From NCBI GenBank assembly GCA_051294905.1, contig CM119382.1, positions 11,408,001 through 11,472,000 on the forward strand: a DNA stretch of 64,000 bases, written 5' to 3'. The notes under the pieces were generated by a model, which was not told the DNA's origin, made no database searches, and was given only the letters and a program-made list of their open reading frames with translations. This document shows, piece by piece, positions 15,561-64,000 of this stretch. The stretch is from Botryllus schlosseri. Its lineage: Eukaryota. The translations under genes were made by a program, and so were the position numbers. How positions within the stretch are numbered: position 1 is the stretch's first letter; every line of letters starts with the position of its first letter.

Positions 15561-16745
15561 ACATCTTTATACAGCAAAATGTTTGTATCAGTAGGCTATT
15601 GGCAATTTTGGGAATAAAATGAGCCCGCACAGTAGGATATTTCATTTCAGACGGCCATACTGTTGATGTGAGCTCTGGAGTTTTACTAGTAATGAAGCGA
15701 AACCGTGATTTCCCGATTAAAAAATTACAAATTAGGTTATCAATTATTTTGAGGCTTCGCGGACCCCCTGAAAATGCTTCGTGGACCCCCAGGGGTCCGC
15801 GGACCCCCGGTTGAGAACCACTAAAATAATATTTACGGTGACCGATTCTTTGTTTATTTATTATAGTTGTGCTCACCGTAAATACTATTATATTCAAATC
15901 CAAATTTTTTGACGGCAATAACTCCGCTTCCACTGGTTGGAATTGAACCAAATTTGGTGAGGATCGTTTCTATAGACAGCCTAACACTTTCATGGGGTGA
16001 ACAGAAAATTTTCAAATTTTTTATCATTTATTTCTATATAATAAATAGAAACTTTCTTCTCCTGTAGCAAAGCGGTTACTGGCTGGAATTGAACCAAATT
16101 TTGTGTGTAGGCTTAAATTAGGTAACCTAACAATTTTATAAAGTAGTCAGTACGATTTGAGAAAAAAAGTCATTTTTGAAGAGCCCTAATCTATATGCAA
16201 ACGAATTGAGCATCCAGTTCAACTGCAATCCAACATTGTAACCGATCACTTGAGTCGACATAAAAATTACCAGTGATTTTATATTTGCCCTTTCTATGTG
16301 ACGATAAACCCGATCACACACCACACGATGAACACACATAAGAACAAATAGTGTCGAAGATCATTATATGCTCGGGAAATCTGTGATCTAGGACCAGTGG
16401 CACCAAAGAGATTCACTATTACATAATAAATATACACTGGATGAAAATATGTTCTCTTGATCTCTACCTTAATGGAAGTACATGTACGATTGCACTGCAC
16501 ATACAATATATATATGAAACATTGAAGGCGCTCGTAATTTCCAACCAGCAAGACAGGACTTTTTAATGTAATGAGGATCTACTATACCATTGCCATGTTT
16601 GGTGACGCCCGAAACCATAGATAGTCCAGAATTTACGGATCATGAGATCCCTACTTTGGCCTTTGTAGTCCGACAACGGCACTTTGCTCGATATAGTCCA
16701 TTAGATGCATGTCGATGTCATCATTACCTTTCGTTCTCACCGGTG

Positions 16746-19700
16746 TTATATTCGAAAACCCGAAAATCGAGTGCAAGACTTGACGGCGCCCGTACCCGGG
16801 AAATGAGTATATTCCGCGAGGGATCCTTGCGTGATCGACATTTGCAATTGATCATTCGCCTCTAGGCTGGCGACATGGTTGAATTGGTACGGCCTGAGGA
16901 GAGATTGATCATCGTCGTACGCTTTAGTTGGTGGCAACGGAGGTATGGCAATCCTGTCCTCGTCGTTCAGTATTTCGTCAAATCCAGGCGGAGATTCTAC
17001 AACCACCGGTTGCAAGTTATTGCCAGTAACCGGCTCGCCCGTAACGGTAAACTCTCGAAGTGGCTCGCCGTTTCGAAGTATTTTCACCGTGGTTTCTCGG
17101 TGCGTTTCCACGCAGAAGCTGACGGATAGGAAGTATATTCCTGTTTCGCGGACGGCGAAGGTACCGCTTTCAGGCTGAACGCTCGCATCGCTTCCAGTTG
17201 GATCCATGTCGTTCTCGGTGAATGATACGATTGGCGAAAAGTCCGAGGAGATATCATAGACTGGAGACGGAGGGCTGTATTGTACCGAATCGGTCGTTGC
17301 TCCACTCGGGTAATCTGGAATGGTGTAACTGCTCCCCATAGCATGAGCAACGGCAAACACAGTTCCTGGGAATATATATAATTATAGTTAGAGAAATGAA
17401 AGAGGGTTCATTGATGCATATTTCGTTAACGCGATATGACGGCTTGCTTACGTAATATAGGCTGTGCTGTATTGTGGGCGTAGCTTTCTTTTACTTATTT
17501 TGAGTACTGGAGTATGTTTGTCAATCTTCTAATTCTGTTCGGCATATTTTAGACTACTAGTAATACTGCAGTTACAGTTCAATTCAGTTTATTCTTAATT
17601 TCATCAATCAAAACTACGTCTGGCAATATCTATAAAATAACTAACCTTCTCTGGACGATCCTCCCAGTTCACGCAAATACTCATCGATCTCATTTTCAGT
17701 GAGCGATGCATCTTTAGTAGCGAAGAGTACGAGATTCTTCGCCGCGTCGACTGTCGCTTGCAGTTGCGAAACGTCTTGTTTGACGGCGTCCGCTGCATCG
17801 CGGCACTTTCGAACGTCATCAGCGTTCTGTGCGATATTGCGTGAAATCTGAGCGGCCTGCACGTTTCCCGAACGCCTGTACGCGCGTATCTTCTCGTCCA
17901 TATCTTCAAACCGGGCTTGGTGACCTTTCAGCACGTCGTCCAAGTACGCAATTTGCTCCATGTTGCTATTGCAACATGATTCCTCTGGATGTTGAACGGC
18001 GTCGCCCTGCATTGCACAATAGCGTCATATTACTTCTCTGTTGTGGCGTTGCGTGTGATACCATCCTGCTTGTTACATCGCTTAATTTAAGTACCTGGGG
18101 TGGTCAGTAACGAAGCACTAGCCTAATCAAGTATAAGTCATCTATATTTGTATCAAATAATATTCAAGTATGGTATTGTTTGGGCAAACCCTATTAAAGT
18201 TTCTAAGGTCAGATTATTTTCTCATTTCAGTTTTCTCATACGTCGAGTCTGAGTCAAGTCAGTCGAAAAACGGGACCCGAGACTGACTCGACTCAACCAT
18301 GACTCGAGTCACCCCAACTGCGGTTTACATATATATAAAAATAAATACCTGTGAAAGGTATAAATCCACGAGATTACACCGTACCTGTTGTATCGTTTGT
18401 TGGTTGAAGGGTAACCTATTCAATAAGGAGCTGTCCTCCAGGATTCTTATCCGATGTTCCAAACTATCTTGACGAACTTGCATTCCTCTTACGACCCACA
18501 TCAAACCGAAAATTGCGAAAATAAGCAAAATAATGATGGCCAATAGAGACACGGATTTCACGCCCACACCTGGATAATAAATGGGAGTGATTACAATTCA
18601 CCAATTCCATTTCCGAGCATAAGGAATGAGCATAACCTAATGATACACATTTTCATGTGTCGAAATAACATCATAACATAATACAAGCGATGCAATAAAT
18701 AAACTTACGGCAACATTTTTGTTTCTCCGCTTTGTCTTCAGTTAAGAAATTCTCGTTTGCAAAAAGAGAATAGTACCTGTACGAGAATCAGTAGATGTTA
18801 AGGTCGAATTTATTTGGAGTGACGTAAAATAGTCAGCGGGAATTTGTAGCAGAGTACGTACACTGTATATCATCATATCAAGATAATGTTGGCAAGAAAA
18901 TGCAATGCCTGGTGGGTTTTAACATTCAGATAATCGCTATCCGTTTTTATCAGGCAGCTTTAGAAATGTGTAACATTCATTTCCATGTGAAAAATAAGTA
19001 CAATCCAGTGCTGGGATAATTCCAGTCATGACTTATGTTATGACACGAGTCAGCATCCTCAAATTACTCAACTACCTCATCATCATTTTATTAAAACTTT
19101 TATCAAATCAACACACTACACGATTTCGATATAATGAAAAGATAGGAGGGTGCCGAAACGACTTGGAGTAGTCTTTTAATCAGACACCCATCCTTGGCCT
19201 ACAGCATGTAAATAAGAGTCATGCACACTGGATAAAAGAAAGGATAACATAAAAGTGAGTGAAAAAAATGAGCGATGCATGTGTCGGTAGGCGAGTTCGG
19301 TATGTCAGATTGTGGTCTGGTAATTTTTAGGGGTGACCAGTATACCTCTGAATTATAATTAATTATATATATTAATTATGTATAATTACAATTATCAGGA
19401 ACGTGAACCGAACGTTCGTACCATCTAACAACCACACATATACCACAACCACAACCACAATTGGTATCGCTTATATGAAACTATAGCAGCTCCGATCAGT
19501 ATATCAAACATGTCAAAATCCATCTTGGGGTGCAGGCGAAATTACAAAGAGGAATTACGAACACCAATAAATAACGATATACTTGGTGGCTTATTTCGGA
19601 AGTCGAATCCACACTGGATTTTAGATATAGGGGTTCATACGAACATAAGTGCACAAATATACATGTGAACAGCTTCTTGGAGGTACAGAACTTTAATATA

Positions 19701-22700
19701 CAGTTAAATAGCATATTCATATTGAAATGAACCCGAATATTTTCGGCTGACACTCGTCAGGGGTAATCGTCAGCAACTATTAGATAATTCAAAAGAACAT
19801 CGTATATCAACAATCGTATCATAAAATATGACGTCACCAGCATGAAATGTCGAATACGAGAGCATTTAATGTAATATTTTTAGATAATACACGAACTCTT
19901 TTTGTTGACGCAGCCTTGGCTGGTGTATTTTGATGGTGTCGGCTTTTATCAATCAGCTATTATCATCAGAAATCAGAATATCCATAATGATATATAAGTA
20001 CGTGCTATAACTGTCAAACCGGCGACTATTTCGAGGGTTTCAACCATTCCATATCGTATGCGTCGACTATATCGGGTGCAAATCGTCTGTAGGCTCGTAT
20101 ACTGAACGTTTTTTCGAAAGTATTCACACAACTATGGAATCATTATACAAGCCTTGAATTTTTTTAATTTTTTTTATTATGTACATCAGCTTCATGTAAT
20201 GTTATGTTCCATGCCAACGTCCTGAGTACTATAGAGTCTCCTTGTAACAGTGCTTGTTATCGGACGCATCAGCAAAGTGGTGTGGATTGTAGACTATATG
20301 TTACAACATATAATGCATATTACATACCTGCCATTTCCTTCATAAGTGCCGGTACTGTTCTTTTTTTCTTTCGGGTTTGTGTTCTCACTTAAGCCATCTG
20401 TAAGAAGGCGAGTTTGTTATTTTGATAAACTACATTCAATTCGATCGCTCTTTGAGCGAACACAATGACGTCGTGACAATCTGGCGAAAACCGTCAAATT
20501 AAGCACTGCGCGTATACATATGATCAATTGCCCTGCTCACGTTCATAAATTACGCGGAAATGGCGAATCAAATGTGATAATACCATGTTATTAAACGAAT
20601 TACTTGATTGGTTTTTACGCAATCAAAGGATCTGATTTCTTGGTCTGCGAACTATATACCAGCCGATGATATTGTGTATATTTATCAGCAGCTGTTTCAT
20701 TGTTTGCGAAGAATTCAACTTGAAGCTATGTCATATCTATAGCTTGTAATATTACCTTTTCCATCTTTCACATCAGCCTTCATCTTCGTTTCCGTTGAAC
20801 TAAACGAGAATTGTACTATTTTGTTACGTTACCTTTTGAATGAGACTAGTTTGCAAGCTATATCCTTTACCGGTGTGCGAAAATTGACGCAGTTACAATA
20901 ATCTTGTGGTGGCCTATCTGTCACATAGACTGCATCATGATTAACATGCCGTATAAACGTATGGATGGAATCATCAATCATCATGTTATTATGCAGCGAA
21001 ACACAAACATTATGAGTACTGGCCCGGTGCAGTGGTGGGTTGAGAATCATGCTGACAGCGGGACGGGGGAGCAGTCACTGTATTCTAATCGCAGTGACTT
21101 GACCATTCCATTCTACATCGTCCAGACGTTGGGCATTCTAATCAGCCCATTATATACCTGTGAGAATAGTCCCACGCAAAGAATATGTATCCAAACCAAG
21201 GATATCAAACATACATGATTTCATCCCGACCGTGAAGCATTGATGATCAAACGACAGAATTATTGTATTCTCAACGTGGCTGACCAAAACAAAATAATAA
21301 AGTTGATTTCATTCTGTTTTATCAGCCATTTCATCATCCTTGAAGGCATAAGGAAGTATAGCTTTGGCGCGGAATCGGCTTGGTTGGCAAACAAAATGCC
21401 ACCCTTTCAAGGCCTGAAACTTTTGTGTATGCTTCCGTAATCTTCCCAACTAATTTCGCCAAGAGAATGTTGTTACGCTTTCGGACAATGTGCATTAAAA
21501 TCCGTATTTCGTAGTGTTATTACGCTACAGTCCGAACATTATTATTTATTCGCGAGTAGCCTACTAGCCAAATACGGCAAGGGAAACTATGAATCATGGT
21601 TCGGTACTGAAACGGTAGTAACAATCAGGGCTATACTATAGTCTCGAGCGTAATCCTGTAGATGCCGGTATGGTATACTTTCTTTGATTTTCATATTGCT
21701 CTACTATGGGGTTTCCGTAAAGTATGGATCGTTCAGTAAGAAACAGGATATGATTTGTTCGTAATGCATTCGATCCGTGAATAAGTTTACTCGTCAGTCA
21801 TCGGTTGAACATCACGTCGGATGACTCCATATCTGTCCAATGGGATGCACCGTTCCTCTGCCCGATTTGGACCAACTAAATAACGGTTGAGATTCGTTTC
21901 AGAAATCAACAGCACAATGGGGACGATTGACAATATCACATTGGAAACGAATCCCGAAATTAGAATGACAATGTGCCAAAATCATACCTAAATGGATCAT
22001 TGCTTTTATCACGTAACATATAATTGCCAGCATTACCGTAAGCCTTATGAGGGCTATGCGGCACCACGATGTGATATGTTGTAGCAATTAGGTCATGGAT
22101 CCGAAAAACTTCCTCTCCACATATTGCAGATACATACACTATAAATAATCCATATTCAGAAATCGAAATTTACCAACTCTTGGTCGGTTTGCTAACATAG
22201 TGACACAAAACCGTGCAGTGCATACAATATTGTAGCCTTTTTCTTTACCTTTTCTGATTTTTCCGAATGGTACCTGGAGCGTTAACTTCCTGATTTTCGT
22301 CAGAATCGTAGGTCAGTTTGTACATGTCTCTGTCGATCCTGATCTATAATGACTATTTTCTTTCTTCCGTGGTCTCGATTTATTGCTAGTCTGCGCGGGT
22401 AAGCATCTCTGTACAAATGAGCCTCGTTAAATATCTCCGACTTAATAATCCGCCTGCGCATCTGACGTCAATGCTAGTGAGCCGAAATGGAGGGTGATTT
22501 CACCTATTATACATTCATCACATCATCGTCATCTCAAGCGAAAGGTATTACGGAATTTCAACATTTGCCAACGTGCTTATGTAGGTATTAATATAATGCT
22601 TATCCGAGAATATCAAATCTTTTTTGCATAACGGCACTATATTAGATCACGTATCTGTCTATAATAGTCCGGAGACCTTATGCGGTACCTGGTATTTCAA

Positions 22701-23987
22701 GTTACGTCACTGTCTGTTGCATCCAAATGGATTACGTTATGTTGCGGCTATAAATCTCGAGATTAGGATTGGACCACGATATCGCGAACACAAACTATAA
22801 TTTACCTTTTCCCTTGTATTTGCCCTTGTCAGAAAAAATGGTGTATTTTCAATACAGCAGTGAGGGTTATGCTTTCTATACTATGGTAAATTACAATATA
22901 CCCCAAACGCTAGAACTAGATATAGCATATATCTGCCTCTGCATCATAGCTTTCGATGTTCTCTCCTCACTATGCCCAGCCGCGTCTGCGTATGTGTCAG
23001 GCCCGGTGATATCCATTTTAGTCCGTTCAAATCTATTGTAACTAACCGATTACACATTCCGGATATGGTGGAATACAATTGGATACGGGAAGTATCATGT
23101 AGCGAGAAGGAATCGACATTTGCTACACGGTATAGTTAAAAAACTAGAGTTGATTTTCATTATATTTCGAGGCTGCGAATCATACTATATAGTTCATCGT
23201 GCGGTTAATTCCTGCACCATCGAGAAACCAGACACTTTATTACATCTACAATTTCGGCAACTCCCAGCAGTAACTTCAGTCGCCAATGAATGCTAACTAA
23301 ATCATATCTTTCGCAGTGACAAATGGTATATGGCTTATAGTTATCGCGGACGAGGACGATTTATGCCTGACTCCACTTAATGTTATAGTTGTGCACACCA
23401 CACCACCATGATGTAAATGGAACGTCAACATAACAATTTTATCTACAATTTCTGTCAAATAGACCGACTGCATCGGGTTTCCTTGTACTCACGCTAGGGC
23501 AAGTTAACGGACATGCTATGGTGGTTCGAAAATAATTGTGATATAATCACACGGTTTCGTAAGAAAACAGTAAAGCTTTTATCAAAGAGGCTTTCTTTAA
23601 AATATGTTATAAACATATGCGTTTTAAAGCATGATTTTGTTTTAAATGCAACGCTATATCGTCGTTATCGTTCGGGTTCCATACGCGATATACGCGATGG
23701 CGTCATGAGATGAAACAGAATATTATATTAGTGCCTGTAATAGTCTGACGTAGCCAATTCAAACGTAAGTTTAAATTATAGAATTAGATCTGTCAATTTG
23801 GTAATCAAACCTTATTATGTTTAGAAAGTACACTTTTTATGGACTTGGGATCATTACTGAATGCTGATTGCTGATGCTTAGTAGATGCGGTCTGTTTCAT
23901 ATTTCCACTTCGGAATTTATTGCAGTTCCTGGCCTCGGGAGTAGGATTGCCCGTGGAATGGGAGTCTTTTATATTTTCTAGTGGCAT
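16746..23987 (-). CDS. Type II transmembrane protein with a coiled-coil stalk and C-terminal C1q (gC1q) domain, about 539 aa inferred
   Basis: Well-supported exons are 17365-16746 (C1q motifs GTFAVRETGIYFLS, KILRNG, LEANDQL and terminal TRFSGFRI), 18006-17646 (heptad-like helical segment) and 18569-18385 (hydrophobic SLLAIIILLIFAIFGLMWVV). Tentative upstream exons are 18776-18709, 20397-20328, 20799-20756, 22343-22249 and 23987-23811. All are GT-AG and phase-compatible, and they sum to 1620 nt with no internal stop. Confidence 0.75.
19076..19290 (-). mobile_element. Diverged short 3'-end copy of the LINE at 38940-39531
   Basis: CATCATCAT...TTTATTA...CGATATAATGAAAAG...GAAACGACTTGGAGTAGTC...CAGACACCCA...TTGGCCT...CATGCACACTG aligns with 38940-39165. 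Confidence 0.6.
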
Positions 23988-24601
23988 TGTTGCGAAAATA
24001 GGAAAATGGTTCAGGTTATAGTGTAGACTAGGTACAGCGCGAAGCGAATGAAGTAGCCTACTGGCACAGCGTCCTGATACTCCCAATAGGCCAATACTCC
24101 ATCAGGTAAAATTTGAGTGAAAACTATGAAGGCATATCGTCGTGCATGATTACTATACAACCCATAATTAAGGAAGAAATCCTATGGTATCGAACGACTT
24201 CATAATATTCTTAGATTATCCGCAAGCCGTACGCGTAGTGTAGGAATTAGTTCGCCATCGTCCATCAGTGTGTCTGTGTGGTATCTCGAAAGTCGGAGTG
24301 ATATCTTAGGCGTGAATAAGATGGATAATATAGGTTCGATCGGTGAGGAGGTTGTTTAGTCCGAAGGGGTCGATCAAACAAACAAACAAACAAACAATTG
24401 AAATTTATAATAAGCGCATCGAATCGACACCCCTTGCGAGACTTCTTTACAGAAAGGGAATTAGCCTATACCTGGCCTTTTGATCGTAACGTATATCACA
24501 TTTATAATTGCATGAACAATGAACATCGTATACATCACCGCATGTACTAATGGTCCGTGAATATATATGAGCATTTGAGCAATTGAACATGCGACATAAT
24601 A

Positions 24602-40615: not shown

Positions 40616-43039
40616 ATGTCACATAATTCCGCTAAACGGACAAAGCCCATCCCTGGTGGGCAGAATGAGCAGGAATACCGCGCAGTCATGCGTAAAATAG
40701 CAACTGGACTTACTAAGGAAAATCTGGATACCCTGTTGTTCCTGTGCAAGGATCACATTCCCCGCGGACGTGAAATCAGCTCTTGCCTGGATCTGGTGAA
40801 GTTTCTCGAGGACAGAGACTTGATCTCGCATTATAGCGCTGTATTCATAGCGGAGGCGCTTCATATAATAAGAAGAATGGATTTACTCAAGGTCATCCCG
40901 TGTATCCGCAATAAAAAGCACTTTGAAGACGAGTTTTTGGCTTTTACGTATTCATCATTTAGCCCATACCGAGTGCTAACCGTCCAGCTTCAAGACGAGC
41001 TGTCGCAAAGGGATTTCGAGTCGTTCCGGCACGAGTGCTCGCAGCATTTGAATATACGCAGTGTAGACTCGTCGAAAAACGTTCTGGCTCTGTTGTGGAA
41101 GCTGGAAGAGGAAGACGTAATTAGCGGCGACGAATTCGATAACCTGCTGTCGATATTGCAGAACATTGACAACGTAAAACCCCTGAAAATGTTTCAAAGA
41201 TTACTCAATGGGGACGAAGGTGTTGTGCTGCCAGCCGGCAAACAGCAGCAACTGCAAAATAGCGAGCAGGACATGTTTCCCGATCGGCACTCTTCTCCAC
41301 CTATGTCTGAACCACCTTCTTACGACCACACTATCGGTCGCGAGACTATCGGTCGCGTGGAAGCAATGCCATTCATGCAACGCCCACCGTTAGAGCCACG
41401 CGCCTCTCTGTCTCCGGGATATGAATATGAGGGAACCGTCAACACAAAGCAGAAATATTACCAATCTCCCGAACCAGCGATGTACAATTTCGATAATCCT
41501 GACGGTGGAATCAAGGTGTCTGAGGCCCGATGGTTTGCTAATGACGAAGTTACTCCAAAAGCAGTGGGGACTGCTATGACATACCCCGAAATCCGCAGGA
41601 CAGATTCACCCGCCTCTATGCCTCCAAACTACTCTCACAATTACTACCCTAATCCTCATCACAGTCAGTCTTACGACGGCTTGTCATCTCTATCCTGGCA
41701 ACAGCCAGGTCCCTATCCCCCTCAACGTCACGAGTCACAATCTCTTCACGTTTCTGCGACCTATCCTGAAATTCCTCGAATGCCTGTTCATCACCAGGAT
41801 TATCACGGCAAGTCATTTTTTCCACCGCAGCCCTACGAGGATCCAGTGTATCATCACACTAACCCGCAGTCCTATCCTGTACATCGGCAATATCAAGTCC
41901 AGAATCACTACCATCGACCTGATGTGAAAACGGTTTCAGCGGAACTTGAAGGTCTTAGCATGTCGTCGACTGAATCTAAAGCAAAGGAAGACGCGCTGGA
42001 CGAGAAGGTTTCACACGATTCATCTGCGATTCCACAAACGGCCGTTAATCAGGAACAAGAATCTCAGCTTGAGTCTCAGAGGCGCGAAGAGCTGAAAGCG
42101 CAAATACTCGAAGAGCAGAGAAACAAGGGATCGTACAAGATGGACAGCTCGCCGGTGGGGCTGTGCGTATTGATAAATAACGTGAAGTTTATAGAGAATC
42201 GCAAGACAGCGGAATACGAACGCCGCGAGAAATTGAACTCGGAAAATGTGGGAACCGAGGTTAAGAAGGTGTTGCCAAACATCCATCTTGACGACAGAGA
42301 AGGCAGCGACTGCGATGCCGACAAACTGGAAATGCTTTTTGAACGGCTAGATTTCACTGTTGAAAGACACAACGATCTCGACCAAAGGTCGATGATGAAA
42401 GTCTTGAAGGAGGCCAGCGAAATTGATCATACTAAATACGACTGTTTTCTGTTGATCATTCTGTCTCATGGCGACAACGGATGCGTTTTTGGTGTGGACG
42501 GCTTCAAAGTTAAGTTATGCGACCTGCAGAAGATGTTCTGGGCGGAAAAATGCGTGACTCTCGCCGATAAACCCAAAATCTTCATCATCCAGGCCTGTCA
42601 AGGCGCGAAGTCAATGCCGGCTTATGCACCTGAAGCCGATCTCATCACTCACGATGGTCCTGTGATCGATGACATCACAGATAAAGGTACTCCCAACAAG
42701 TCCGACTTTCTAATGGCTCACTCCACTGTTCCTGGATACATTTCGTACAGATCGATCCGCGAAGGTTCGTACTATGTCCAGGAAATTGTCAAAATCTTTA
42801 AATCGTGCCATCAAACGGAGGACCTGTTGAGCATGATGGTGATGGTTAGCGATGCAGTCGGGAAGTATCAGCGAAAACAGGTGCCGATGCCGATACCGAC
42901 TTTGCGGAAGAAGGTGTACTTTCATCTGAAGGCAGGCTGCACGTTGGACGATTTGGACGACTCGAGCGTGACGGAGTATCCGTCGATGGAGGTTCCGTCG
43001 CGGACGCGCGTGACGCAGGAGTCTGGGGATATGGAGTAG
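40616..43039 (+). CDS. CASP8: Intronless caspase-8/10-like initiator caspase (DED-DED, long linker, caspase domain), 807 aa
   Basis: A single uninterrupted ORF. It has two N-terminal death-effector-like domains (LLFLCKDHI...RRMDLL; YRVL...LLWKLEE), catalytic SHGD and the pentapeptide QACQG (the caspase-8/10 form), and p10 motifs DFLMAHSTVPGYISYR, GSYYVQ and TLRKKVYF. The symbol marks family membership; orthology is not established. Confidence 0.9.
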   Translation: MSHNSAKRTKPIPGGQNEQEYRAVMRKIATGLTKENLDTLLFLCKDHIPRGREISSCLDLVKFLEDRDLISHYSAVFIAEALHIIRRMDLLKVIPCIRNKKHFEDEFLAFTYSSFSPYRVLTVQLQDELSQRDFESFRHECSQHLNIRSVDSSKNVLALLWKLEEEDVISGDEFDNLLSILQNIDNVKPLKMFQRLLNGDEGVVLPAGKQQQLQNSEQDMFPDRHSSPPMSEPPSYDHTIGRETIGRVEAMPFMQRPPLEPRASLSPGYEYEGTVNTKQKYYQSPEPAMYNFDNPDGGIKVSEARWFANDEVTPKAVGTAMTYPEIRRTDSPASMPPNYSHNYYPNPHHSQSYDGLSSLSWQQPGPYPPQRHESQSLHVSATYPEIPRMPVHHQDYHGKSFFPPQPYEDPVYHHTNPQSYPVHRQYQVQNHYHRPDVKTVSAELEGLSMSSTESKAKEDALDEKVSHDSSAIPQTAVNQEQESQLESQRREELKAQILEEQRNKGSYKMDSSPVGLCVLINNVKFIENRKTAEYERREKLNSENVGTEVKKVLPNIHLDDREGSDCDADKLEMLFERLDFTVERHNDLDQRSMMKVLKEASEIDHTKYDCFLLIILSHGDNGCVFGVDGFKVKLCDLQKMFWAEKCVTLADKPKIFIIQACQGAKSMPAYAPEADLITHDGPVIDDITDKGTPNKSDFLMAHSTVPGYISYRSIREGSYYVQEIVKIFKSCHQTEDLLSMMVMVSDAVGKYQRKQVPMPIPTLRKKVYFHLKAGCTLDDLDDSSVTEYPSMEVPSRTRVTQESGDME

Positions 43040-45271: not shown

Positions 45272-45898
45272 ATGTCTGAGCCATGGGATGATTCTTCGGT
45301 AGAGAAAATTACAAAAGAGGATGCCTTGTCAAGATATTCCAAGCATCGTCAAGCAGCCCATGCCATGTATTACAGTAAATGTGACACAAAGCAGCTATTC
45401 GATCGTATCCCAATGAGATACAACATTCTTATGGTTATGCGCTTTGATGGTAACCTTGGCTTTCCGGGTGGCTTTGTGGACTTGAGAGATCAAAGCGAAA
45501 CCATTGAAAGTGGACTAAACCGTGAGTTAACCGAAGAAATAAACTTGAATCAGGAATATATGATCACAGAAGATAATTATCGAGGAACTTATGTTCACAC
45601 AATGCCTACCAGGAAGTTTATAAATCACTTCTACCTGAAAGAAGTCACCGAAATGGAATATTCCGCCATTGAAAGGCGTGTTTTTGATTCAATCGAGTGG
45701 GGAAAGGAAACCTTAGGCATTGTGAATGTGCCTGTCCAGAAAGGTGTCGGTATCTCAAGGATTTATCTGCCAATCGTGGATTTTTTGCAAAATAAATTTA
45801 TCGGCAATGCCAGGCAGCAGCTTATTGAAGGCTTGCTGGAAACTGGAATTTTTAATCATGATGAGATGCTAGCGTTTTGGAAGGAAATTCAGCAGTAA
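45272..45898 (+). CDS. NUDT16: U8 snoRNA-decapping Nudix hydrolase NUDT16-like, single exon, 208 aa
   Basis: [29 protein letters not shown]...GLNRELTEE (Nudix box), HFYLK and [14 protein letters not shown] closely match NUDT16 as I recall it ([29 protein letters not shown]...GLNRELREE; FIGSAREQL). Confidence 0.92.
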   Translation: [208 protein letters not shown]

Positions 45899-63056: not shown

Positions 63057-64000
63057 CTAGCTGATAGTTATCGGCAACGCAATGGCGGCCGCACACAGTA
63101 TTTTAAAGTCCGAGTAAGGCATCAGTACTTCCAACCATTCGTTTTCCGAAGGATCATAGCATTCCATTTGGTTGCCTTTGGACGCATCGCAACCGCCGCA
63201 AACGTATATGTCATCCATAACGTTAAACGCGCTGCACCCTTCCCTAGTGTTAAACATCGGCGCGATACTAGACCAAACTTTGGTTTTAGTGTCGAGAACT
63301 AAATTTGTAGCGAGTGCACCATCTAACGACTCTCGCCCGCCTATAATGTAAATGGACTTGTCGAAAGCGGCCGCAGCACTTGACATTCTGGGATTAGGCA
63401 GGGACGGATATTCCAGCCAAGTATTTTCAATCAAGTGATACGCCAGCACAGACGAGATCATAGTGTCGGCGATCACGCCTCCTATGCAGAAAATTTTGTT
63501 ATCGAAAAGCACAGAGGCGTGGTGAACGAACCCCTTACCACGAGTTAGATATATCCACGTGTCCGTAAACTGATTGTATTCTTCGATGCAGCTTTCGTCA
63601 CTACATTTTCTGCCTTCGACGACATAAATGCGACAGTGATCGGCAACAACAACAGGACGGGGGCCATGGTCGTACCGCGAATTCTTCCCTTCACGTACTG
63701 CAGGAACGTCAGTGCCCGTGTCGATATTGATTTGAAAGACGGACCGGTGCGTGAATACGTAGATGTAATCACACAGAGCCGCGAGCGAGAAGCAAGGACC
63801 CACCGGGGTGGGAATATTGATAGCGTCGAACTCCCAGTTGTCGCAACCAATAATGTGCATCTTGTTCAATTGTCCGAGGTACACAATCAGACCATTCACT
63901 CCGTCATTCTTGGGGTAGCTGTATGCCAATACTCCGGCTCTGTCGAAAATTGTAGAGCTAACGCGCCTGTAATTCGGCTCGGCGTCCCTGATCAACGGCT
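63057..64000 (-). CDS. Kelch-repeat (beta-propeller) protein, C-terminal part; the reading frame runs off the window edge
   Basis: Repeats KIFCIGG...YHLIENTW, SIYIIGG...DTKTKVW and DIYVCGG...YDPSENEW, with more degenerate blades upstream. The frame is open from 64000 to the stop at 63057. Confidence 0.85.
   Translation of the reverse strand, partial: PLIRDAEPNYRRVSSTIFDRAGVLAYSYPKNDGVNGLIVYLGQLNKMHIIGCDNWEFDAINIPTPVGPCFSLAALCDYIYVFTHRSVFQINIDTGTDVPAVREGKNSRYDHGPRPVVVADHCRIYVVEGRKCSDESCIEEYNQFTDTWIYLTRGKGFVHHASVLFDNKIFCIGGVIADTMISSVLAYHLIENTWLEYPSLPNPRMSSAAAAFDKSIYIIGGRESLDGALATNLVLDTKTKVWSSIAPMFNTREGCSAFNVMDDIYVCGGCDASKGNQMECYDPSENEWLEVLMPYSDFKILCAAAIALPITIS

What the first reader, a model, noticed from the sequence alone, without database searches (positions are those of the whole stretch)
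16746..23987. Membrane-anchored C1q protein with a receptor-like layout (cytosolic tail, TM, coiled coil, gC1q)
Seen: a C1q-type head ending FSGFRI, a helical stalk with a CC pair (EESCCNS), an internal 20-residue hydrophobic segment preceded by basic residues and KQKCCR, and about 150 polar residues upstream with no N-terminal signal peptide. Established: most C1q-domain proteins (C1q, C1QTNFs, cerebellins, EMILINs) are secreted. The type II TM-stalk-trimeric-head layout is that of TNF ligands and class A scavenger receptors, and gC1q and TNF share a fold. Inference: this is a cell-surface, trimeric pattern-recognition or adhesion receptor, possibly from a lineage-specific family; the juxtamembrane CC may be palmitoylated. 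TM-bearing C1q proteins are, as I recall, known from some invertebrates, so novelty is not guaranteed.
Basis: partly seen in the sequence, partly recalled or inferred. Interest (0 to 1): 0.7.

Follow-up and report, generated by a model that had tools for sequence, protein, structure and literature searches.

The report
Membrane-anchored C1q-like protein of sea squirts
This is a real, expressed, single-copy gene for a C1q-family protein that carries an internal membrane anchor and a conserved cytosolic tail instead of a secretion signal; the layout recurs in several unnamed assemblies and in the sea squirt Styela clava, but nothing is known of its function.

Summary
The gene is real and the layout is right.

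- **Gene model:** spliced contigs from three runs, plus raw RNA reads, join seven minus-strand exons (22410 to 16746). They encode 474 aa: a polar tail (1-91, ending KQKCCR), one hydrophobic helix (92-113), a linker, an SCC pair, a helical stalk and a 204-aa head ending FSGFRI.
- **Start codon:** the ORF at 23987 is not used. Reads run collinear through its supposed acceptor, and the start is MYKLTYDSD (22325), behind an in-frame stop.
- **Head:** it is a divergent gC1q domain. Pfam C1q gives 20 bits, below the cut-off. The family profile hits cerebellin-1 and EMILIN-1 (6e-7), while TNF ligands reach only 0.25. The fold matches C1q/TNF (Z 10.7), with a roughly 45-residue Pro-rich insertion.
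- **Trimer:** a trimer model scored 0.70, against 0.01 for the best control.
- **Relatives:** Styela clava LOC120348623 and four unnamed assemblies share the layout and the MYKLTY start. The window's genome has no paralog.
- **Inferred only:** type II topology, palmitoylation and function.

Membrane-bound C1q proteins are mentioned for bivalves, so this is a new variant of a known kind. Earlier scan notes cover only this same stretch.

The parts
22249..22410 (-). Exon 1. It holds the 5' UTR (seen up to 22388 in X1 and 22410 in X2) and codons 1-25 plus 2 bases. The ATG is at 22325-22323 (MYKLTYDSDENQEV...), with an in-frame TAG at 22346-22344.
   Evidence: Styela isoform X2 starts at the same MYKLTYDSD.
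20756..20799 (-). Exon 2 (44 nt), polar tail.
   Evidence: Joints 20397/20756 and 20799/22249 in X1, X15 and X2. AG/GT flanks.
20328..20397 (-). Exon 3 (70 nt), tail, ...NSTGTYEGNG(R).
18709..18776 (-). Exon 4 (68 nt). It holds the conserved tail motif YYSLFANENFLTED and the juxtamembrane KQKCC (C85, C86).
   Evidence: The motif recurs in Styela and in L006.
18385..18569 (-). Exon 5. It holds the single hydrophobic helix (residues 92-113, KD19 maximum 3.1), the conserved MWVVRGMQV, and a linker.
17646..18006 (-). Exon 6. It holds the ectodomain SCC pair (C159, C160) and about 105 residues of helical, heptad-patterned stalk.
   Evidence: (helices 10-46, 49-97 and 104-115 of the exon, pLDDT 71).
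16749..17365 (-). Exon 7, coding part. This is the divergent gC1q head (residues 269-474). It has invariant C353 and C466, a roughly 45-residue Pro-rich insertion between strands E and F, and ends FSGFRI.
16280..16748 (-). Stop codon (16746-16748) and 3' UTR. The UTR is at least about 460 nt, judged from the length of the X2 contig, and its end is not mapped.
23808..23987 (-). It is an open frame but is not joined to the gene in any transcript seen, so it is not counted as part of the gene.

Best explanation
The gene is single-copy, has 7 exons and lies on the minus strand. By its nearest named relative the host is an ascidian. It encodes a 474-aa single-pass membrane protein of the C1q family.

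Parts of the protein:
- **Tail:** a polar, Lys-rich N-terminal tail of 91 residues without a signal peptide. It most likely stays in the cytosol. It carries conserved motifs (MYKLTY-D/E-S/T-acidic and Y-Y-S-L-F-A-N-x-N-F) and a juxtamembrane Cys pair.
- **Anchor:** one hydrophobic helix acting as a signal-anchor, which gives type II topology (N-terminus inside).
- **Stalk:** outside the membrane, a second conserved Cys pair and a helical coiled-coil stalk of about 105 residues.
- **Head:** the stalk holds up a C-terminal gC1q jelly-roll head that assembles as a homotrimer. The head has an intrachain Cys pair and a long Pro-rich loop between strands E and F.

Working model: the protein displays a trimeric C1q head on the cell surface. 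It acts like a membrane-bound ligand or recognition/adhesion molecule, as TNF-family ligands do in layout and as cerebellins and C1QLs do with their heads. The conserved tail would provide sorting or signalling.

Shown here: exon structure, transcription, the conserved layout, and C1q-family kinship of the head.

Inferred: orientation in the membrane, disulfides, acylation, trimer formation in vivo, and any binding partner.
For: Transcript:
- Single spliced contigs (X1 1744 nt, X2 1975 nt) join all seven exons with GT..AG introns. Contigs from X15 carry the same joints.
- Raw RNA reads (X23) cross two of the joints.
- The genome holds no second copy that could be a retrocopy.
- The translation is open for 474 codons.

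Anchor:
- The only strongly hydrophobic stretch is residues 92-113. The first 30 residues have a mean KD of -1.5.
- There is no in-frame ATG between M31 and the helix.

Head:
- Homologs P0004, P0008 and P0009 pass the Pfam C1q cut-off at 26-52 bits.
- The family profile against PDB finds cerebellin-1 and EMILIN-1 gC1q at 6e-7, then C1q, C1QL3, collagen X and caprin-2. RANKL reaches 0.25 and Eiger 0.8.
- Foldseek top hits are C1QL3, C1QL1 and Cbln1.
- VIA-align gives Z 10.7 for caprin-2 C1q and 10.2 for C1QL1.
- AFDB cluster hits are C1q proteins and EMILIN-2.

Trimer: score 0.70 against a best control of 0.01. This mark was reached by 21 of 30 solved homomers and 0 of 23 single chains. Runs agree in at least 51% of contacts and pLDDT is at least 52. 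The interface lies on strands 75-81, 102-106, 155-165 and 198-204.

Stalk: helical, with heptad periodicity.

Conservation:
- Styela clava XP_039274726 (522 aa) aligns end to end, with both CC pairs, the tail motifs and MWVVRGMQV conserved.
- Loci L002, L003 and L004 each have an MYKLTY exon, a TM+CC+coiled-coil exon and a head exon.
- L006 has the MYKLTY exon, a YSLF tail exon and the head exon. Its TM+CC exon was not located.
Against: - The window's own head scores below the Pfam C1q cut-off (20.0 against 23.7).
- The head model is poor overall (mean pLDDT 52). Only the core strands reach 70-83.
- The fold search cannot separate C1q from TNF (Z 10.7 against 9.7).
- The trimer pass may reflect the model's memory of solved C1q/TNF trimers.
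- Net charge in the 15 residues on either side of the helix is equal (+2/+2). Orientation therefore rests on the long, Lys-rich, signal-less N-terminus, the closer basic cluster KQKCCRVGVK, and the Cys pairs on the C-terminal side.
- No topology predictor could be run.
- There are no N-glycosylation sequons in the ectodomain.
- The contigs may be incomplete at the 5' end, so an extra upstream exon in other tissues is not excluded. Styela has such an isoform, X1.
- No functional data exist for any member.
Confidence: 0.75

Rival explanations
1. The protein is a highly divergent TNF-superfamily ligand rather than a C1q-family protein. Type II anchor, stalk and C-terminal trimeric jelly-roll is the standard TNF-ligand layout. 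The head would bind a cysteine-rich TNFR-type receptor and might be shed.
For: - Layout is as in EDA or Eiger.
- VIA-align Z is 9.7 for EDA-A1 and APRIL/BAFF and 9.4 for Eiger, within 1 of the best C1q hit.
- EDA-A1 and 4-1BBL appear among the Foldseek hits.
- Weak Pfam TNF hits at E 0.07-0.08.
Against: - Sequence evidence points to C1q. Pfam C1q passes the cut-off in five or more relatives, while TNF never does.
- The profile against PDB gives C1q-family hits at 6e-7 and TNF ligands at 0.25 or worse.
- The AFDB top hits are nearly all C1q proteins.
- The motif pattern G.F...G.Y.F...N...D.V...FSGF is the C1q signature.
Confidence: 0.1
2. The protein is secreted. The hydrophobic segment would act as a cleaved signal peptide from an alternative downstream start, or the ectodomain would be released constitutively, so the mature protein is a soluble coiled-coil C1q like the bivalve sC1q-like type II proteins.
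For: - Coiled-coil plus C1q is a common secreted layout in bivalves (PMC6835236).
- Basic residues occur in the linker and stalk (HRIR, RAYRR), and MWVVRGMQV next to the membrane is conserved. Either could be a processing site.
- The contigs cannot exclude minor transcripts.
Against: - All spliced contigs include exons 1-4.
- No in-frame ATG lies between M31 and the helix, so no N-terminal signal peptide can be made.
- The tail is conserved at protein level from the first Met across six loci, which argues that it is translated and functional.
- No conserved furin consensus aligns between the window and Styela.
Confidence: 0.1
3. The orientation is inverted, or the head is intracellular (N-terminus out, C-terminus in). 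The C1q head would face the cytosol, as in caprin-2, whose C1q domain is intracellular.
For: - Flank charges are balanced (+2/+2).
- Caprin-2 C1q is the top VIA-align hit.
- The C-terminal part has no N-glycosylation sequons.
Against: - A 91-residue tail with 17 Lys/Arg and no signal peptide is unlikely to be translocated (established positive-inside and N-length rules).
- Conserved Cys pairs in the stalk and head fit an oxidising compartment.
- A juxtamembrane CC on the N-terminal side fits cytosolic acylation.
Confidence: 0.05

Closest known systems
gC1q-domain proteins (Pfam PF00386), with cerebellin-1, C1QL1/3 and EMILIN-1/2 gC1q as the nearest solved examples
   Same: - C-terminal jelly-roll head with the C1q residue pattern and a predicted homotrimer.
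- The head sits on a trimerising stalk.
- As in EMILIN-1, the stalk is a coiled coil. From my knowledge of the EMILIN-1 structure, its head also carries a long flexible insertion after strand E.
   Different: - No signal peptide; an internal membrane anchor and a conserved 91-aa cytosolic tail instead.
- No collagen repeats and no EMI domain.
- The head is so divergent that a single-sequence search of 1.84 billion proteins finds no ordinary C1q protein at E <= 0.001.
- The window copy falls below the Pfam cut-off.
TNF-superfamily ligands (for example EDA-A1, Eiger, RANKL)
   Same: - Type II layout: cytosolic N-terminal tail, signal-anchor, stalk, C-terminal trimeric jelly-roll.
- The fold is indistinguishable at the level of the model (Z 9.4-9.7).
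   Different: The sequence signature is C1q, not THD. No TNFR partner is known here.
Styela clava LOC120348623 (XP_039274726 and XP_039274727, 'uncharacterized protein')
   Same: - Apparent ortholog with the same order of parts.
- Both CC pairs, the tail motifs, MWVVRGMQV and the head Cys pair are shared.
- The head is about 36-40% identical.
- Isoform X2 starts at the same MYKLTYDSD.
   Different: - Styela has a longer Pro-rich tail and linker.
- Styela has an annotated alternative first exon adding 19 residues.
- It is uncharacterised, so it gives no functional information.
Membrane-bound C1qDC proteins of bivalves (mentioned in PMC6835236, citing Gerdol 2011 and 2015) and secreted 'sC1q-like type II' (coiled-coil plus C1q)
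   Same: C1q head behind a coiled coil. The existence of membrane-bound forms has been stated.
   Different: - Those come from hugely expanded, tandemly duplicated immune families. This gene is single-copy with a conserved tail.
- No sequence kinship beyond the C1q domain was detectable here.
- The bivalve sequences themselves were not examined.
Class A scavenger receptors and collectin-12 (type II, coiled-coil stalk, trimeric)
   Same: Type II trimeric surface receptor layout with a helical coiled-coil stalk.
   Different: No collagen repeats and no SRCR or C-type lectin head. Pfam finds only C1q and TNF in the full-length ortholog.

Membership tests
C1q domain family (PF00386) | Significant sequence kinship with known gC1q domains | tested here: met
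   - Profile of the 10 heads against PDB: cerebellin-1 and EMILIN-1 gC1q at 6e-7, C1q A/C at 1e-5, C1QL3 at 2e-4, collagen X at 4e-4.
- Relatives P0004, P0003, P0005-P0009 pass the Pfam cut-off.
- The window head links to them at E 9e-23 to 4e-4.
C1q domain family (PF00386) | The protein itself reaches Pfam's gathering score (23.7 bits) | tested here: not met
   The score is 20.0 bits, E 8e-4, and only profile positions 31-73 match. The long insertion splits the domain. This is a scoring threshold, not a structural feature, and membership is argued from the row above.
C1q domain family (PF00386) | Ten-strand jelly-roll fold | tested here: met
   - AF2 model: core strands at pLDDT 70-83, overall 52.
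- Foldseek probability 1.0 to C1QL3, C1QL1 and Cbln1.
- VIA-align Z 10.7, rmsd 2.9 over 111 residues, to caprin-2 C1q.
- The fold is shared with TNF.
C1q domain family (PF00386) | Conserved C1q residue pattern (Gly/aromatic/Asn core and C-terminal F-S-G-F) | tested here: met
   Invariant G66, G74, Y76, F82, N97, D170, G179, F199 and G201 in alignment A1. They align with the cerebellin and EMILIN pattern.
C1q domain family (PF00386) | Homotrimeric head | tested here: inconclusive
   The model supports a trimer. The score is 0.70 against a best control of 0.01, a mark reached by 21 of 30 solved homomers and 0 of 23 single chains. Run agreement is at least 51% and pLDDT at least 52. The pass may come from memory of solved trimers, and there is no measurement.
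C1q domain family (PF00386) | Secretory signal peptide (usual, not defining) | tested here: not met
   The N-terminus is polar (mean KD -1.5 over the first 30 aa). The only hydrophobic segment is internal, residues 92-113. No SignalP or DeepTMHMM was available.
TNF ligand superfamily (PF00229) | TNF homology domain recognisable by sequence | tested here: not met
   Pfam TNF gives 13.5 bits against a cut-off of 23. In the PDB profile search the best TNF ligand is RANKL at E 0.25 and Eiger at 0.8.
TNF ligand superfamily (PF00229) | Type II membrane topology with a C-terminal trimeric jelly-roll | tested here: inconclusive
   The order of parts fits. Orientation in the membrane is inferred, not measured.
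TNF ligand superfamily (PF00229) | Binds a cysteine-rich TNFR-type receptor | not testable with these tools
   No candidate partner was identified.
EMILIN/multimerin | N-terminal EMI domain and signal peptide | tested here: not met
   Pfam on the full-length ortholog P0004 finds only C1q and a weak TNF hit. The exons of the window protein give no EMI hit.
Collagen-stalked C1q/CTRP or membrane collagens | Gly-X-Y repeats in the stalk | tested here: not met
   The 474-aa sequence has no Gly-X-Y run. The stalk is helical.

The most novel reading that the evidence does not exclude
Ascidians may have a conserved, single-copy 'C1q-headed TNF-like ligand'. This would be a type II membrane protein that signals juxtacrine through a trimeric C1q head and signals back through its conserved MYKLTY / YSLFAN-x-NF tail. 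It would be a living example of the membrane-anchored state linking the C1q and TNF families. The polymorphic head loop (codons 380-386) might mark the partner-binding face.
Probability: 0.12. Interest if true: 0.7.

Novelty: new variant of a known kind. Interest (0 to 1): 0.42.

Why it matters
Almost all described C1q-domain proteins are secreted. To my knowledge no chordate C1q-domain protein has been described with a membrane anchor.

This gene shows a conserved, transcribed family that mounts a C1q head on the chassis used by TNF ligands (type II anchor, stalk, trimeric head). It also has a cytosolic tail conserved from its very first residue.

If the topology holds, it gives a tractable case in sea squirts, which are close relatives of vertebrates. 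Two questions become testable: how C1q heads can work in cell-bound form, and how the C1q and TNF families relate.

On present evidence it remains an uncharacterised variant of a well-known domain family. It is not a new kind of system.

Tried and rejected
rejected. It is not joined in any contig, and reads run collinear through the would-be acceptor.
- **Paralogs in the window or genome:** none. tblastn of the exons against the window, the head against the genome and the family profile against the genome find only this locus. The profile search adds two weak ordinary C1q hits at E about 2e-3.
- **PF00386 against the genome:** lists about 7 ordinary C1q loci. This one is not among them.
- **Full-length relatives:** The search for homologous proteins with P0004 and with alignment A2 returned only P0004 itself. 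Alignment A1 added only P0015.
- **ESM Atlas on the Styela tail and stalk:** only generic long-helix look-alikes.
- **Synteny:** L002 and L003 have CDC37 downstream of the gene, but the window does not.
- **Rfam on 16000-24500:** nothing.
- **Literature:** no paper combining 'C1q domain', 'type II transmembrane' and 'coiled-coil'.
- **P0001 contig DNA:** not retrievable.
- **Strand from raw reads:** not decisive, because depth was at most 1.2 and both directions occur in the head exon.
- **Organisms of the ENA and Logan relatives:** could not be named.
Full report
**What is in the sequence**

- On the minus strand, the ORF 16746-17360 ends in CTRFSGFRI.
- The ORF 17641-18012 carries EESCCNS and reads as a charged, helix-like segment.
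- The ORF 18325-18567 holds a 22-residue hydrophobic run.
- Just upstream, a short exon ends ...KQKCC with a GTAAGT donor.
- The splice phases fit: C|GT makes the Arg of KQKCCR, and G|GA makes the Gly that joins stalk and head.

**Transcript evidence**

I laid 16740-22739 against four runs of the same species from four studies.

- In X1 a single 1744-nt contig joins all the exons, and in X2 a single 1975-nt contig does the same.
- The exons are 22249-22388/22410, 20756-20799, 20328-20397, 18709-18776, 18385-18569, 17646-18006 and 17365 downwards.
- Every skipped part is CT..AC on the plus strand, which is GT..AG on the minus strand.
- X15 shows the same joints at depth 250-450. It also has low-depth unspliced pieces, as expected of pre-mRNA.
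- The true RNA raw reads (X23, about 6% of the run read) cover the exons thinly and cross two of the joints.
- The genome has no second copy of the head, so the spliced form is not a retrocopy.
- The alternative joint 18010/18389 has the same length. It is explained by one synonymous difference next to the junction.

**The 5' end**

- The contigs end at 22388 and 22410.
- Raw-read depth is 0.99 in 22340-22539 and 0 in 22540-22739.
- 6 of 6 raw reads covering 22345 run collinear with the genome there, showing only a 2-base deletion allele.
That is not what the transcripts do.
- The first in-frame ATG is at 22325. A TAG precedes it, and it stays a TAG in the deletion allele.
- The annotated isoform X2 of the Styela clava ortholog starts at exactly the same MYKLTYDSD.
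- The gene therefore has seven exons, the protein is 474 aa, and the tail is 91 residues, not about 150.
- An extra upstream exon in other tissues cannot be excluded, because Styela isoform X1 has one.

**The protein**

- **Residues 1-91:** polar (14 K, 3 R, 15 D/E), with no hydrophobic N-terminus.
- **Residues 92-113:** the only strongly hydrophobic window (KD19 maximum 3.1).
- **Between M31 and the helix:** no in-frame Met. No translation start can turn the helix into an N-terminal signal peptide.
- **After the helix:** the conserved MWVVRGMQV and a linker of about 40 residues.
- **C159-C160, then the stalk:** about 105 residues that AlphaFold2 folds as long helices (pLDDT 71-81). Their heptad hydrophobic periodicity is the highest in the protein.
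- **Head:** residues 269-474.

**What the head is**

- On its own the head scores 20.0 bits on Pfam C1q (cut-off 23.7), 20.6 on BclA_C and 13.5 on TNF.
- An exhaustive phmmer search of 1.84 billion representative proteins found only ten hits at E <= 0.001. None was an ordinary C1q protein.
- Nine of those ten are clear relatives. Several pass the C1q cut-off, with P0008 at 52 bits, P0009 at 51 and the Styela protein at 26.
- A profile of the ten heads hits solved gC1q domains. These are cerebellin-1 and EMILIN-1 at 6e-7, C1q at 1e-5, then C1QL3, collagen X and caprin-2. The best TNF ligand is RANKL at 0.25.
- The alignment shows the C1q pattern plus two family-invariant cysteines, C353 and C466 in the whole protein.
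- In the C1q/TNF topology these two cysteines lie on neighbouring strands C and H. An intrachain disulfide is therefore plausible, but that is inference.
- The AF2 model is weak overall (pLDDT 52), although its core strands reach 70-83.
- The model retrieves C1QL3, C1QL1 and Cbln1 first by Foldseek.
- By VIA-align it gives caprin-2 C1q at Z 10.7 and C1QL1 at 10.2. EDA-A1 and APRIL/BAFF follow at 9.7, which is a tie at fold level.
- AFDB clusters give C1q proteins and EMILIN-2.
- A low-confidence, Pro-rich stretch of about 45 residues (head residues 107-154) sits between strands E and F. It holds the family-conserved PP-L/I-P.
- My verdict is a divergent member of the C1q family, not a THD. Its fold is the one shared by both families.

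**Trimer**

- Three copies of the head gave a score of 0.70, against 0.01 for the best of three controls.
- That mark was reached by 21 of 30 solved homomers and 0 of 23 single chains.
- The runs agree in at least 51% of contacts, and pLDDT is at least 52.
- The confident contacts lie on strands 75-81, 102-106, 155-165 and 198-204.
- The tool warns that a pass for a family with solved trimers may come from memory. I count this as support for likeness, not as proof.

**Conservation of the layout**

- *Styela clava* XP_039274726 (522 aa, 'uncharacterized protein LOC120348623') aligns from MYKLTYDSD to the C-terminus.
- Conserved features are the tail motif GTY-x-GNGR-x-YSLFAN-x-NF-x-TED, the juxtamembrane CC, MWVVRGMQV, SCC, parts of the stalk and the head.
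- L006 has the MYKLTYESEDD exon, a YSLFSNNF tail exon and the head exon. Its TM+CC exon was not located.
- L005 has the CC/coiled-coil exon and the head.
- The tail is thus conserved from its first residue. That argues it is translated and used.
- In the window's genome the gene is single-copy. It is also distinct from the roughly seven ordinary C1q loci.
- Other agents' notes call this genome a sea squirt. That agrees with Styela being the only named relative, but I did not verify the species.

**How it most likely works**

- I commit to a type II, cell-surface, homotrimeric C1q-like protein.
- The long, Lys-rich, signal-less N-terminus and the basic cluster KQKCCRVGVK place the tail in the cytosol. 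This follows the positive-inside and N-length rules and is inference.
- The Cys pairs and the head lie outside.
- C85/C86 are in the position typical of palmitoylated juxtamembrane cysteines (inference).
- C159/C160 at the base of the coiled coil could form an interchain disulfide knot (inference).
- YSLF fits a YxxPhi sorting signal, and the acidic S/T cluster after MYKLTY fits CK2-type sites. Both are motif matches only.
- The gene is single-copy, and the tail and head are conserved. I therefore favour an endogenous partner, meaning juxtacrine ligand or adhesion as for TNF ligands, cerebellins or C1QLs. I rate this above a microbial pattern receptor of the expanded bivalve type, but nothing here tests binding.
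- The alleles seen in the RNA contigs differ from the assembly at 16 listed coding sites, 8 synonymous and 8 not. Five of the non-synonymous changes are packed into codons 380-386, at the start of the E-F insertion. This is one shared alternative haplotype, so it is a lead at most.

**Comparison with what is known**

- The head belongs to the C1q family.
- The chassis is that of TNF ligands.
- The coiled coil plus gC1q with a flexible insertion recalls EMILINs, but without the EMI domain, signal peptide or collagen.
- Gerdol and colleagues state that membrane-bound C1qDC proteins have been identified in bivalves. They also class secreted coiled-coil C1q proteins as 'sC1q-like type II' (PMC6835236). 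A membrane-bound C1q protein is therefore not unheard of.
- I found no paper describing a type II coiled-coil C1q family. No characterised relative turned up either.
- I rate it a new variant of a known kind, with moderate interest.

Noticed in passing
window 19660-19935 (intron 3 of the gene): This is a copy of a dispersed repeat of about 270-280 bp. The genome search gave 4662 first-look candidates, and the 40 that were scored are 91-94% identical on many chromosomes. It accounts for the enormous contig depth (10^4) at 19540-19940 in the RNA runs. It has no Rfam match. It is probably a SINE- or MITE-like element that is transcribed as part of many RNAs.
   Followed up: partly
window 40616-43039 (+): An uninterrupted 807-aa ORF with two death effector domains (PF01335, 2e-24) and a caspase domain (PF00656, 1.4e-44). 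This is an apparently intronless caspase-8/10-like gene. It lies about 18 kb from the 5' end of the C1q-like gene, on the other strand. No link between the two genes was tested.
   Followed up: no
window 45272-45898 (+): A single-exon ORF of 208 aa matching the Nudt16-like U8 snoRNA-decapping enzyme family (PF22327, 7.6e-50).
   Followed up: no
window 63057-63995 (-): An ORF of 312 aa with Kelch repeats (PF01344, 2e-25). It runs towards the window end and is probably part of a larger gene.
   Followed up: no
window 17013-17033 (codons 380-386 of the protein): The RNA-derived contigs of three runs share a haplotype with five non-synonymous differences within 21 bases, in the head's variable loop (P380A, N384 changed at two positions, N385K, L386F). 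Most other differences in the exon are synonymous. The 87%-identical relative P0001 also differs there.
   Followed up: partly
window 22345-22346: All RNA evidence (6 of 6 raw reads and the X1 and X2 contigs) lacks two bases present in the assembly, in the 5' UTR. This is an allele or a small assembly error. The upstream in-frame stop is kept either way.
   Followed up: yes
window 22461-22468 (minus strand): A perfect TGACGTCA palindrome (CRE-like) lies about 50-60 bases upstream of the 5' ends of the transcript contigs, with a TATAAT-like stretch near 22510. This is a possible core promoter and was not tested.
   Followed up: no
L002 14030-19605 and L003 15751-19831: In two unnamed assemblies the orthologous gene is followed by a convergent CDC37 gene. 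The window has no CDC37, so this neighbourhood is not kept in the window's species.
   Followed up: yes
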